Positions 36,495 to 42,082 of a stretch of DNA of 64,000 bases are shown piece by piece; position 1 is the first letter of the stretch, and every line of letters starts with the position of its first letter. Location of the stretch: the NCBI GenBank assembly GCA_048772705.1, contig JBLWGC010000092.1:1-64000 (forward strand). Reading direction: 5' to 3'. The position numbers and the translations under genes were made by a program. The notes beneath the pieces are model-generated. The model saw nothing but the letters and a program-made list of their open reading frames with translations, was not told the DNA's origin and did no database searches. Source of the stretch: Leidyana gryllorum EB-2025a. Lineage: Eukaryota > Protista > Apicomplexa.

Positions 36495-39243
36495 CTACGC
36501 GTATGTGCGATTCAAGGCCTGATCGTATCCTTCCAATCCGTTACTGCTGGCGGACCCCTCAATACCATACTGTGCCATCAGCTGCCGGTACCCCAATGAT
36601 CCAGTGGTCAGAATCATAATGGCCCGCGTTCCTTTCCACTGATGCTCAGCCAAATATCGGCAAGCGCTCATTTCACTTCTGGTGATGCCCCCAGGAACAA
36701 TCAGGATGGTGACAGGGACTTTGTCGCCATCCTGGGGCATCGACATATTGGCGCGAGCTGATCGACCGGAATGTCCTCCAAGCAGGCGACTAACAGGTGC
36801 TACCAGCTGAAGTGCATCATCAATTCGAGCTCAGACCCAATGTCAAACGCAACGCACTCCTCCATTCCACCTCGGCATACCCTCCACACTCACACTCACA
36901 CACTCACTCACACACACCCACCCACTTCCCCTGCCCTTCGTCATGCATCGCCACTTACGGATTCCTCGTTCGCGCGTACCACTGCTTTCCACGTTCTCCC
37001 CTCGTTCTCCATTGTTGCGGATTGAAAGAGCTTGACTGCGACGCCTCTGATTGATAGGAGACTGTGCTACTTGCCGACGCTTACCCAGCAACGGGGCATA
37101 CCCACTATGGACATAACTAATATCTCGGACCACAGGTTCCTCAGATCGCACGATGTCGAAGGTCTTCTTCAAGAACTGCCAATCACTTAGTGTGCCTTTC
37201 TTATATTGTGTGCATCCCAGTATGCCGGCTTTCTCTAAAGCACTCCACCTGTAGCCTTCCCATATCCCATACTCGCGACACAATTGCCGTCTCAAGGCCT
37301 GATGTGCTCCGCGATCGAATTGTTCCGCGTGGACGCGACAATTCAACGCCGCCAACCGGTATATATCCTCCAAAGGATATTGTCGGTCACACAATCCGAT
37401 GAGAACCCGGCAATTCTCCTCGAACGTCGAAGCACCGCCCATTATCTCTAAACGATACTCAGTCTGAGCCTCATTCTGTTACACGAGGCACTCACCGTCT
37501 TCGATACGCAGTAGCGTGTAGAATGCCGGATGCTTTATGATGTTTGTCACCAGAAATGTGCTCACATTTATATGATCGGCCAAATGCCGATGCTCGCCTT
37601 GATGCTGTTTCAATTGCGACATGACTTGCTGCATTTCTGCCATACTCCATTGCCCTGTGCGCCCTCTCTCAAATGCTGACTGAATATTCAAAGCATAGGT
37701 ATGTAGTGTGCTCCCAAGCTCGGTGTGTGGTAAAACGCGCGTCTCTCTGTACACCTTATCTTGATCTGTGAGCTTCATTTTCAATGGCTCGCCATTTAAG
37801 ACCTCCCCCGGGATATCAACATGGGCACTCTGCAACATGAATAGCGTCTCGACAGCGACACCACGTTGTCACCTACATCGATTCCCCATGTCTGCTCCAA
37901 GAGCGCTTCGTACGTGAAGGGGGCCGCAAATGGTGATATCCAATCACAGTTACGATCAATGATTACCACTCTATCCAGCGTATATGCTGGAATAGCCTCG
38001 CGCTTGGATGTTTCAGGTGCGGATGGAAACAGGAAACTGGCCATAGGACCTTCGACTTTCTCATACAGCTCGTCACCCGGACCTTCGGAATCACAATGAC
38101 AGAAGTTTACCTCATCTTCGAGCAAGCGAACAGCAGCCTCTTGATCTTTGGCTCCCATGAGGACTTTGTGCATTCCGGGAGTCAGCTGACTGCAGAACTG
38201 GTCAGGAGGTAACGGCAGTTTAGTCGCAGAGACCGTTTCGCCGTGAAGCAAAGCTTCCACAACGTTTTCAGCCTCTTTGAACTGTTGCTCCAGGGTGTAG
38301 GTGACCACCTCCTGCTGATTGCCCGGAACTGTGGCTACTTCGGCGGCAAATGCTTCTTTGATCTCGCGGGCCATCAATCTCGCAGTCGGTCCGAGTCCAC
38401 AAATGACTGCTTGTTCGGGGATGTGGGCATGTTGCAACAACTTGACTGCGGCTCTGGCGAGATCTTGTATGGGTCCAAAGTCGCCATCCAGTTTCAGATC
38501 CCGATCCGCGGTGGGGCGTTCCAGCGAGTATACCATTTCATCCAGTCCGAAGCAGGGGAATTTGACATCCGCCACTGTGACTGAGAGATATTTGAAAGTG
38601 AGGTGATTGGGAGGGTTGGGTATGACATCCAGGCGCTTGAGTTGATCCAAGATGCGTGTCATGTGGAGTGTGCGGCGTCTTGGGAAGAAGTTGAGTTCAA
38701 TACGAGCCCGTTCTTTGACGCCGTGCGTCTTGAGGCTATCTTGAATGGCATCGAGGAGGCCACTAAATAAGAGAGAGATTGATCGCGTGTCCAGAGGAAG
38801 CGCCGACACACCCACCAGATATGATTTGAGGCACTCAGAGAACTGTTAGCTAGCACGACTATACGAATGGGTTTGGTGTTATCAACTTCCGAACAAGCGA
38901 CCGCAAGGTCATGATATTTGCTTAGTCGCCACCAGTTGTCGAGCTGCAGCTCTTTTAGAAAGGTCACATGGATGTCTGGGTTGATGTGCGGCGTGTGGTA
39001 ACGGATCAGAAGCAGTTGTTGCCTACATACAGATACTCAGTGGGCCAACAAGGGCGTCATCAAAGCAGATAAAGGACTTATAGCGGGGCCCGCCATCCCC
39101 AGCCGTCTAGTTGAAGGATGCCGAGGGACAACGAAAATAGCTCAGCTTACGGGCGGACTACCGAATAAGTTCTTGAGCTCCGAAGTGACTTCCGAGTGAA
39201 GACATCTTGAGAGCGCTGAGAGAGTGTCATAAACTACTGACAT
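36495..39243 (-). CDS. VPS33: Sec1/Munc18 family protein VPS33, multi-exon
   Basis: FDDALVGPLS, IIDRNCDWISPFAAPFTYEALL, LADHIN, DISYVHSGYAPL, GGITRSEMSACRYL, ILTTG. Exon 1 MSVVYDT...SELKNLF starts at ATG 39243. Confidence 0.85.
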
Positions 39244-39248
39244 CCAAA

Positions 39249-40509
39249 TTAATTGTAATACAACTCAATGTTCATCCCATGCTTAATTTCATATGTATCC
39301 AAGTCTATATGATCCTTGAGCACCACATGTTGTTTCTGGAACTTCATTTTCTCTGGGCGAGTACCTGATCAATCGATCGATTATCAGCAGCGAGAGACAC
39401 TACTTACCTAAGATTGCCGCAGCCAGCTTCTTCACATCGAGTACAGTGTCATCTTTAGAGCACTTGATACGAGCTTTTTTACCCAGACGATCGTTCACTG
39501 TTATCTCCATAAGCATTTGCGGCTGTGCGGCCGTCGCGTTGGGTGTCGTCGGCAACTCGTCGCGCACTGAAGTCTGAACCTTTCTCTTCTCCTTGTCAAC
39601 TTCGTCTCGTTTTCGCTTTCGCTCGCGCTCTTTCAAACGGTTCGCGCCGTAGTCGTCGCGGTCACGCCAAACTCGTGGTAACCTGTTCTCTGGAGGACGC
39701 TCATCCACTTCGCCATGATGACGGTACCCGCCTCGATACCTTGAGGACGAGACCGCCGCCGCTCCCGATGTTTCATCTGCGGATCCCTTGCGGCGTTGGT
39801 CTCCTTCGGCACCCACTGTCTCCCACTCGGTCCGGCGACGCATCTTCCGTCGCTGATCGTCCTCAATGTCTTCCGGGCCGCCGCCGTCCCTGGTATCACG
39901 GGTCCCGCCACCAACTGGCTCCCGTCGGCCGTCCCTACCGCGGTCCCGGGTATCGCCGCGATCCCTTTCTCTCTCGCCACGCCTGTCTCGGTCCCACTCC
40001 CGGTCCCGATCGCCTCCTCTACTATCACAAGAACCCCGCCGGTCCCCTGCGTAGCCTCCTCTCCGATTATTCCTTTCGGGAAACCCTCGATCTCTGTGGC
40101 GATAAGCGGACGACCGATCGCGATCATATGGCCGTGAACTTCCTCCCTCCTCATCTCGCCCATATTCGTCCCGATAGGCCCGAGGCTGGTATCGCGTGTG
40201 CCACCCTTCACCGCTCCGATACCGTCGATCTTCTGACGGTCGGTGAGATTGAGCCTGGCGCTGGGGTGACTCATTCGGCGATCTCGCAGCTGAGTGGCGG
40301 TCGGGCCTGCCGCGTGAACGGGAATGCTCCCTATCTGCGGCAGCCTTCGCGGGTCGGGCACCCTCGTGGTCATCCTCTCGTGGCTTTACACGCACTGCCG
40401 CATCCTCTTGCTGCTTTTCATCCGACCTCAGACGCTCCTCTTCTCGCTCCTCGCCTTCCCCTTCCTCACGGGAGTCAATGTGTTGAGGGTCGGAGTCTTC
40501 CTCCTGCAT
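39249..40509 (-). CDS. HUB1: Hub1/UBL5 ubiquitin-like domain preceded by a long in-frame Arg/Asp/Glu-rich region (intron 39365-39407)
   Basis: Spliced C-terminus [35 protein letters not shown]|[37 protein letters not shown] matches the UBL5 consensus, including the terminal YY. Confidence 0.88.
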
Positions 40510-40513
40510 GGGA

Positions 40514-42082
40514 CTATATTTTTTTCGCAACGTCGCTCGCAGCTGCAGGTCGCCTAAAATGCCTATCCCATTCTCCCTGAATATAATGAAACACAATCAG
40601 GGCTCGACGGTCGTCCCCAGACAACGGATTTTTGTCGGGATGCCAATTAAGCTGCAACTGACGTAATCTACGACGTAACTCTTGCTCATTGCTGATAGCG
40701 TTCAGCTCCACAGCAATTTTGTCGATCAACGCTTGCGCACTGCGGGCTTCCATATGACACCAAAGGAAAACGAAACTGGCCACGTACCTAGCATGACCTC
40801 CCCTACGTGACTTGGGCACACGATCACTCGACTTCCTGCTCGCCGATCCTGATGGCATCCGAGCGCCAAAAACATATGGGGGAGCGCTGGCAGCTCCCCA
40901 ATTAGCAGCGTATTCGCTTCGCGAGGGCCGCATGGGACACTTCTGCTCGTGCCGCCGACGAACCTGTATCGCAGTACACACAGGGACGTCCATGTTCCAC
41001 CCATATTCGGCCGCAAATCTCAAACCGCAAAATCTGCAGCTGTTACGAGGATTCATGTCACAGTTGACCACATGTTGATCGAGTAGATAGCTCGCTGGAC
41101 CAACATCGGTTGACCGAAACTCTCGAGAGCAGTGCCGGCACTGGAAAGAAGGGTGTGCACACACACTGACAGCCTTACTTGCGCGTAATTCTTGGGATTC
41201 GCTCGACAATATTTCGAATGTTCGGTCAATCGTGCCTGCAGCCCTTTCAGTCCTTCCTCAGTATTGCCACCGAACGATGTTCTGCAGATGGATGTGGGTG
41301 CGATAAGCCATGGTGCTCACCCGCAATAGTGACAACATGTCTCGGGGTTGCTTTTACATACTTCTTCATGTAGGGCCACTTGTTCCAGAGCGATCACATC
41401 CGGAGCTGACTGGAAATGTAAGCCGCAGAAGACACACCAAGCGTTGGAAGACGGATTTTGAGCACATATCTGAAGCGGTGTAGATGGATTTCTTCCATTA
41501 GATTGTTCGTACCCTTTGATGCAGTATTCGGTGGGCGTATTTGTTGTCCCCGAATGCAAGTCCGCAGTAGACACAGTCTTTGCCCTCATAGATACTTTCC
41601 GGATCGAGAGGCGGTTTGTCCGGGATCTTCTTTCTAGCGGCTTCTTCTTGTTTGGCTCTATGCTCGCGATACTGGGCGAATAGATTCCGAATGCTGGATG
41701 TGTTGAGGGGTGTTTTGATTTGGGGGTCACTAGTCTCCACCGGAGGGGTGTCATCAGGAACTTCGACAGGTGCGGTTGGGCATTCCTCCAGACTTGGGCT
41801 GGGCCTCAATAGCTTGAGTCGGTCGAGAGAGGCCTTGACGGGTTTGGATTGTTCGGGTTTGCTGAGTGACCGAGAATAAGTTGGGGCCGGTGGAGAGAAG
41901 GATGGGAGCGGAATTTCATGTCGTGTGAACATGGAAGCACCAGGTCTACTGGGACATTGTGACTCTTCATGGTCTCTGATAGCTGACCAAGAGAATGATT
42001 TGCCACAATATTGGCAATTGAAGCTCTCTTCGAGAATCTCGGCTATACTCCCATAGGGTCCCAGATCGGCTTGGTGTTCCAT
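40514..42082 (-). CDS. Repeated C2HC-type Zn-finger protein with C-terminal J-domain (HPD), multi-exon
   Basis: CQYCG..HE..C, CVYCG..H..C, CVFCG..HEEVC, CRHC..HVVNC, CRFCG..HEQKC; [13 protein letters not shown]. Confidence 0.75.

What the first reader, a model, noticed from the sequence alone, without database searches (positions are those of the whole stretch)
39249..40509. Hub1/UBL5 fused to a ~330-aa RD/RE-rich (SR-like) low-complexity region
Seen: one open frame runs from ATG 40509 through a long Arg/Asp/Glu/Gly-rich tract ([20 protein letters not shown]...) directly into a UBL5 domain ending IELYYN. Established: Hub1/UBL5 is normally a free ~73-aa protein that binds Snu66/SART1 (via Asp22) and Prp5 (via His63) non-covalently and promotes use of non-consensus 5' splice sites. 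Here Asp22 is kept, but the His63 position reads K (YEIKHG versus YEVHD). Inference: a covalent SR-like/Hub1 chimera could be a lineage-specific splicing factor for this genome's tiny introns and varied donors (GTCAGT, GTTAGT, GTGGGC, GTATCG).
Basis: partly seen in the sequence, partly recalled or inferred. Interest (0 to 1): 0.85.

Follow-up and report, generated by a model that had tools for sequence, protein, structure and literature searches.

The report
Hub1/UBL5 with long RD-rich tail
This genome's only copy of the small splicing helper Hub1/UBL5 carries a real 331-residue charged, floppy tail; similar tails occur unstudied in ciliates and fungi, and here the tail may stand in for the usual Hub1 docking motif, which the two normal partner proteins appear to lack.

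Summary
Real, with one correction: the UBL5 domain is split by a 43-nt GT-AG intron (39407-39365), so it is not one open frame. The spliced gene encodes 405 aa: a 331-aa Arg/Asp/Glu/Gly-rich tail, then UBL5. It is the genome's only UBL5. RNA-type contigs of a close relative splice the intron and run at least 100 nt into the tail. There, 21 of 29 listed tail substitutions are synonymous (24% expected) and indels keep the frame, so the tail is coding. No contig spans the whole gene; residues ~115-243 are uncovered. 'Lineage-specific' fails: RS/RD-tailed UBL5 occurs in Mucorales, ciliates and protist metagenomes, and H63K is common even in free UBL5. New here: this genome's SART1 and Prp38A lack their RS tails and any detectable HIND, while MFAP1 is kept. 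Natural Prp38-UBL5 fusions also exist in marine metagenomes. Best model: an ordinary B-complex Hub1 whose own tail replaces HIND-mediated escort (mechanism inferred, untested). No paper describing such tails was found. The scan's notes on this genome showed it only on this same DNA.

The parts
39517..40509 (-). 331-codon RD/RE/G-rich, disorder-like N-terminal tail (exon 1, from ATG 40509)
   Evidence: Stop-free; 21/29 listed substitutions in the relative's contigs synonymous, indels in frame; no Pfam or PDB match; 11% order-promoting residues
39408..39516 (-). UBL5 domain, first half (M332 onward; equivalents of N7, K13, D21, D22 kept)
   Evidence: PDB UBL5/Hub1 match E 3e-9
39365..39407 (-). 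43-nt GT-AG intron (GTAAGT donor, CAG acceptor), phase 1
   Evidence: joint 'skips 43' in contigs of runs X2 and X3
39249..39364 (-). Exon 2: second half of UBL5, H63K and D64H, C-terminal YYN, stop TAA 39251-39249
   Evidence: PDB match E 1e-6
40514..41209 (-). Upstream neighbour: last open frame of a Zn-finger/J-domain gene; its stop ends 4 nt before the tail ATG
   Evidence: contig X1-2 covers 40518-40741 unspliced
37796..39243 (-). Downstream neighbour: Sec1-family (VPS33-like) gene, presumed ATG at 39243, 5 nt after the Hub1 stop; 55-nt intron at about 39030-38976
   Evidence: Sec1 Pfam E 1e-8; spliced joint in X3

Best explanation
The gene encodes this organism's only Hub1/UBL5, as a 405-aa protein (frame shown to be coding; full-length mRNA inferred). 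The UBL5 domain most likely does the normal B-complex job: it docks on the MFAP1 C-terminal region through Asp22 and clamps the 5' exon end through N7/K13, helping U5/U6 hold weaker 5' splice sites (inferred from conserved residues and PMC10943123, PMC12830679). The disordered mixed-charge tail most likely supplies nuclear import, concentration in splicing compartments and weak multivalent contacts with RNA and RS-type proteins. It would thereby replace the HIND-based escort by Snu66/SART1 or Prp38, since neither has a detectable HIND or RS tail in this genome (inferred).
For: Single UBL5 locus by exon and profile search. Spliced RNA-type contigs run from UBL5 to 39616/39624 without a break; further contigs cover 39611-39749 and 40167-40488. 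Synonymous excess p about 6e-6 and 3e-3 in the two covered parts. SART1 is a 461-aa frame starting 82 nt after the upstream gene, with no RS or HIND region. Prp38A is 216 aa against 312 in human. Pfam HIND gives 0 candidates genome-wide. MFAP1 is present with Lys at the R358 position. In yeast, tethering a HIND-blind hub1-D22A to Snu66, Prp38 or Prp8 restores function, so the means of recruitment is interchangeable (PMC12830679). Human SART1 has an RS domain next to its HIND (PMC4141198).
Against: No transcript spans the whole gene; 39750-40166 has no RNA cover, and the runs are only guessed to be RNA and come from a relative. A 25-residue HIND can escape a filtered genome search, and there was no positive control for that search. 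Whether ciliates and Mucorales with tailed Hub1 also lack HIND was not tested, so the link rests on one genome plus one related SART1 (P0207). Human Hub1-D22A reaches speckles without HIND or tail, so a tail may not be needed. No functional data.
Confidence: 0.5

Rival explanations
1. The fusion is real, but the tail is a generic add-on (nuclear localisation, phase partitioning, solubility or a phosphorylation switch) gained repeatedly and unrelated to HIND loss; Hub1 binds MFAP1 directly.
For: Tails arise in unrelated lineages and show no alignable similarity to this one; tail length varies from about 30 to 331 aa; HIND binding is not essential in human cells.
Against: Both HIND carriers in this genome have lost exactly their RS/HIND ends, and other lineages fuse UBL5 where Prp38's HIND would sit.
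Confidence: 0.33
2. One gene gives two products: the long form plus a free ~74-aa Hub1 from M332/M334 by a downstream start or processing, with the short form doing the splicing job.
For: Met is retained at the domain start; most tailed homologues also keep Met there.
Against: No RNA end is seen near 39516 (contigs cannot show starts); several tailed homologues have Leu, Ile or Pro there (P0034, P0001, P0002). UBL5 at the C-terminus offers no di-glycine cleavage site (own knowledge).
Confidence: 0.1
3. The tail is not translated (long 5' UTR or gene-model artefact), or the true protein is still longer because a 28-nt intron (40531-40504) joins the upstream J-protein in frame.
For: No RNA cover over 39750-40166 or across 40489-40517; ATG context unremarkable; the 28-nt intron would be in phase (read by hand).
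Against: Synonymous bias and frame-keeping indels in both covered parts of the tail; 0 of 20,000 shuffles stop-free; contig X1-2 reads 40518-40531 unspliced and the donor GTTGCG is weak.
Confidence: 0.07

Closest known systems
Hub1/UBL5 (human UBL5, yeast Hub1; PDB 4pyu, 3plu, 6ahd)
   Same: Orthologous domain, single copy, N7, K13, D21, D22 and the C-terminal YYx end kept
   Different: 331-aa N-terminal tail; H63K and D64H; no HIND partner detected in the genome
RS/RD-tailed Hub1 in databases: Rhizopus delemar EIE75403.1, Mucor circinelloides EPB91788.1, Tetrahymena malaccensis KAL4454729.1, Paramecium tetraurelia XP_001424697.1, metagenome protein P0041
   Same: Same architecture: charged low-complexity tail, then UBL5 at the C-terminus; Paramecium also has K63-H64
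   Different: Their tails are mostly 100-160 aa (297 in P0041), usually RS-rich and basic; this one is the longest seen, RD/RE/G-rich, near neutral, and not alignable to them
Natural Prp38-UBL5 fusions (P0001, P0002, P0042, P0044, P0048, P0051, P0053, P0054) and engineered yeast Prp38/Snu66-Hub1 fusions
   Same: UBL5 as a covalently attached C-terminal domain
   Different: No PRP38 domain here; Prp38A is a separate gene on another contig
SR and SR-related proteins; RS region of SART1/Snu66 and PRPF38A
   Same: Arg-rich dipeptide low-complexity region in a splicing factor
   Different: No RRM; few RS dipeptides; no detectable sequence homology

Membership tests
Hub1/UBL5 | Sequence match to UBL5/Hub1 over the domain | tested here: met
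   Both exons match PDB UBL5/Hub1; profile A1 hits only this locus
Hub1/UBL5 | No C-terminal di-glycine; ends YYx | tested here: met
   Ends LYYN-stop
Hub1/UBL5 | Asp22 surface (HIND/MFAP1) and N7/K13 exon-binding residues | tested here: met
   Alignment
Hub1/UBL5 | His63 (Prp5-binding surface in yeast) | tested here: not met
   Lys; the position is not invariant in the family
Hub1/UBL5 | Free protein of about 73 aa | tested here: not met
   In-frame coding tail of 331 aa; many database members are also extended
Hub1/UBL5 | HIND-bearing partner (Snu66/SART1 or Prp38) in the genome | tested here: inconclusive
   None detected, but short motifs can be missed and no positive control was available
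Hub1/UBL5 | Association with the spliceosome and effect on 5' splice-site choice | not testable with these tools
   Needs pulldown or genetics
SR proteins | One or two RRMs | tested here: not met
   No Pfam hit in exon 1
SR proteins | RS domain dominated by RS/SR dipeptides | tested here: not met
   5 RS and 6 SR in 331 aa; RD/DR/RE/ER dominate
Prp38-UBL5 fusion | PRP38 domain in the same chain | tested here: not met
   PF03371 hits lie on contigs C213 and C211

The most novel reading that the evidence does not exclude
Hub1 recruitment has been rewired several times in eukaryotes: where the HIND escort on Snu66 and Prp38 is lost, Hub1 becomes self-targeting through its own RS/RD tail (this genome, perhaps ciliates and fungi) or is welded to Prp38 (marine protists). 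The tail here could be the RS end of SART1 or Prp38A moved onto Hub1.
Probability: 0.3. Interest if true: 0.7.

Novelty: new variant of a known kind. Interest (0 to 1): 0.48.

Why it matters
The papers read here treat Hub1/UBL5 as a small free protein delivered by a HIND motif, and mention no natural tailed or fused form. If tails or Prp38 fusions replace HIND, nature has run the yeast tethering experiment repeatedly. That gives a direct test of what HIND is for (delivery only, with the working contact on MFAP1 and the 5' exon). Tailed forms exist in tractable species (Tetrahymena, Paramecium, Mucor), so the test does not need this organism.

Tried and rejected
Second free UBL5 in the genome: none. 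Homologues of the tail: none in Pfam, PDB, pairwise BLAST or JGI metagenomes; no tandem DNA repeat behind it. HIND in the tail or in SART1/Prp38: none by Pfam and a relaxed motif recalled from memory; the single DNA-pattern hit lies out of frame in a hexokinase-like gene, at control level. H63K as a lineage marker: rejected. Idea that ciliate or other linkers hold a degenerate cis-acting HIND: not supported by Pfam or motif; the single-sequence model of P0206 was too poor to judge (pLDDT 53). Bacterial promoter scan is irrelevant here. rRNA search to name the organism failed twice, so the lineage is not established by a tool. Mishra 2011 was not held. Literature searches found no description of tailed Hub1; subscription journals are not covered.

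Full report
Observation. On the - strand, ATG 40509 opens 367 stop-free codons; UBL5 begins in frame at M332 (nt 39516). The genomic frame then stops at LGK*. A 43-nt intron (39407-39365, GTAAGT donor, CAG acceptor) restores the frame and gives a 405-aa product ending LYYN. The two UBL5 halves match human UBL5 and yeast Hub1 in the PDB; N7, K13, D21 and D22 are kept, H63 is Lys and D64 is His. The tail is 21.5% Arg, 24% Asp+Glu and 10% Gly, has net charge +3 and 11% order-promoting residues, and has no Pfam or PDB match.

Is the tail translated? Exon searches and a 13-sequence profile find one UBL5 locus in the 15.5-Mb assembly. Three runs guessed to be RNA, from a close relative (about 91-98% alike), gave contigs that skip the 43-nt intron and continue without a break 100-108 nt upstream of the UBL5 ATG; other contigs cover 39611-39749 and 40167-40488. 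Of 29 tail substitutions listed, 21 are synonymous in the RD frame against 24% expected (p about 6e-6 proximal, 3e-3 distal), and none makes a stop (17 further differences were not shown by the tool). The one insertion is 3 nt. A loose contig end at 39749 reads, by hand, as an in-frame 15-nt deletion. None of 20,000 shuffles of the tail is stop-free. Limits: contigs show no starts, nothing covers 39750-40166, and no single molecule spans the gene. I put a translated tail-UBL5 fusion at about 90%.

How unusual is it? A search with a related fusion returned UBL5 with RS/RD-rich tails of about 100-300 aa from Mucorales (Rhizopus, Mucor, Rhizomucor, Apophysomyces), ciliates (Tetrahymena, Paramecium, Pseudocohnilembus) and metagenomes (P0041, P0055). 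The Paramecium form is 189 aa in all seven cluster members, from five species. The ESM Atlas has 182-277-aa 'HUB1' clusters in Ascomycota and Basidiomycota (scores under 0.9, sequences not seen, so a lead only). Among 58 distinct intronless UBL5 loci from metagenomes most are free, and about eight have charged or RS/RD extensions. The tails do not align with this one, so either repeated gain or fast drift. His63 is replaced in 20 of 185 fetched proteins and in 15 of 41 short or free metagenomic ones; Paramecium has the same K63-H64. Whether Prp5 binding (H63 surface, PMC8790634) is lost cannot be told from this.

Context in the genome. HIND normally lies at the SART1/Snu66 N-terminus (after an RS domain in human) or the Prp38 C-terminus, and in both in Plasmodium (PMC8431670, PMC4141198). 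Here SART1 is a 461-aa frame beginning 82 nt after the upstream gene with no RS or HIND segment, and no HIND-like motif occurs in any frame of 3.8 kb upstream. A related SART1 from another run (P0207) is clipped in the same way. Prp38A is 216 aa, lacking the ~100-aa tail of the human protein. Pfam HIND gives no candidate in the genome; this search had no positive control. MFAP1 is present, with Lys at the position of R358 that binds UBL5 D22 in the human B complex (PMC10943123). Retention of D22 therefore needs no HIND. Separately, eight marine metagenome protein clusters carry UBL5 fused to the C-terminus of Prp38, the place where HIND sits in plants. This mirrors engineered yeast fusions that rescue a HIND-blind Hub1 (PMC12830679).

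Mechanism. Shown: single-copy, spliced, coding fusion with the exon- and MFAP1-contact residues intact, and no detectable HIND partner. Inferred: the domain works in the B complex as usual, and the tail provides nuclear import and weak multivalent contact with RNA and RS-type proteins in place of the HIND escort (0.5). The main rival is a generic tail unrelated to HIND loss (0.33). A dual long/short product (0.1) or an untranslated or longer fused model (0.07) are less likely.

Novelty. The architecture is already in databases for several lineages, but I found no paper describing it in the searchable library. It is a UBL5 orthologue by sequence, not an SR protein and not a Prp38 fusion. Verdict: new variant of a known kind, interest 0.48.

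Noticed in passing
P0001 (L003:2943-3881), P0054 (L009:5001-5933), P0002, P0042, P0044, P0048, P0051, P0053: Natural Prp38-UBL5 fusion proteins of 303-318 aa in marine eukaryote contigs (single open frame in those checked; P0054 on 27 contigs). UBL5 sits where Prp38's HIND lies in plants; D22 is Asn in P0054. Not found described; may deserve its own follow-up.
   Followed up: partly
L006:1486-2871 (G000:C230) and L016:2372-3751: SART1/Snu66 lacking the N-terminal RS and HIND region in this genome and in a related Logan contig. The G000 frame also holds a ~25-codon insertion near its C-terminus, absent from P0207, probably an in-frame intron.
   Followed up: partly
L004:1471-2121 (G000:C213): Prp38A of 216 aa: PRP38 domain only, no RS tail or HIND.
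   Followed up: yes
window 40514-40509 and 39249-39243: Neighbouring genes on the same strand are 4 nt and 5 nt apart; RNA-type contigs run from Hub1 exon 2 up to 126 nt into the Sec1/VPS33-like gene. Overlapping UTRs or polycistronic RNA cannot be told apart.
   Followed up: partly
window 40531-40504: A weak-donor 28-nt candidate intron would join the J-protein in frame to the RD tail; the one contig there is unspliced.
   Followed up: partly
P0045, P0046, P0017: The three ciliate Hub1 tails have a Glu/Lys-rich helix-like stretch ending K-[YV]-G some 25-40 residues before UBL5, loosely HIND-like by eye; no Pfam HIND hit.
   Followed up: partly
P0007, P0008, P0014, P0015: Oomycete models with a WW domain upstream of UBL5 (Phytophthora kernoviae, Pythium insidiosum); real fusion or merged gene model not checked.
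   Followed up: no
L007:3507-6500: A frame of at least 997 aa with a long Ser/Thr/Glu-rich region followed by what look like fasciclin-type domains, two genes upstream of SART1; not searched.
   Followed up: no
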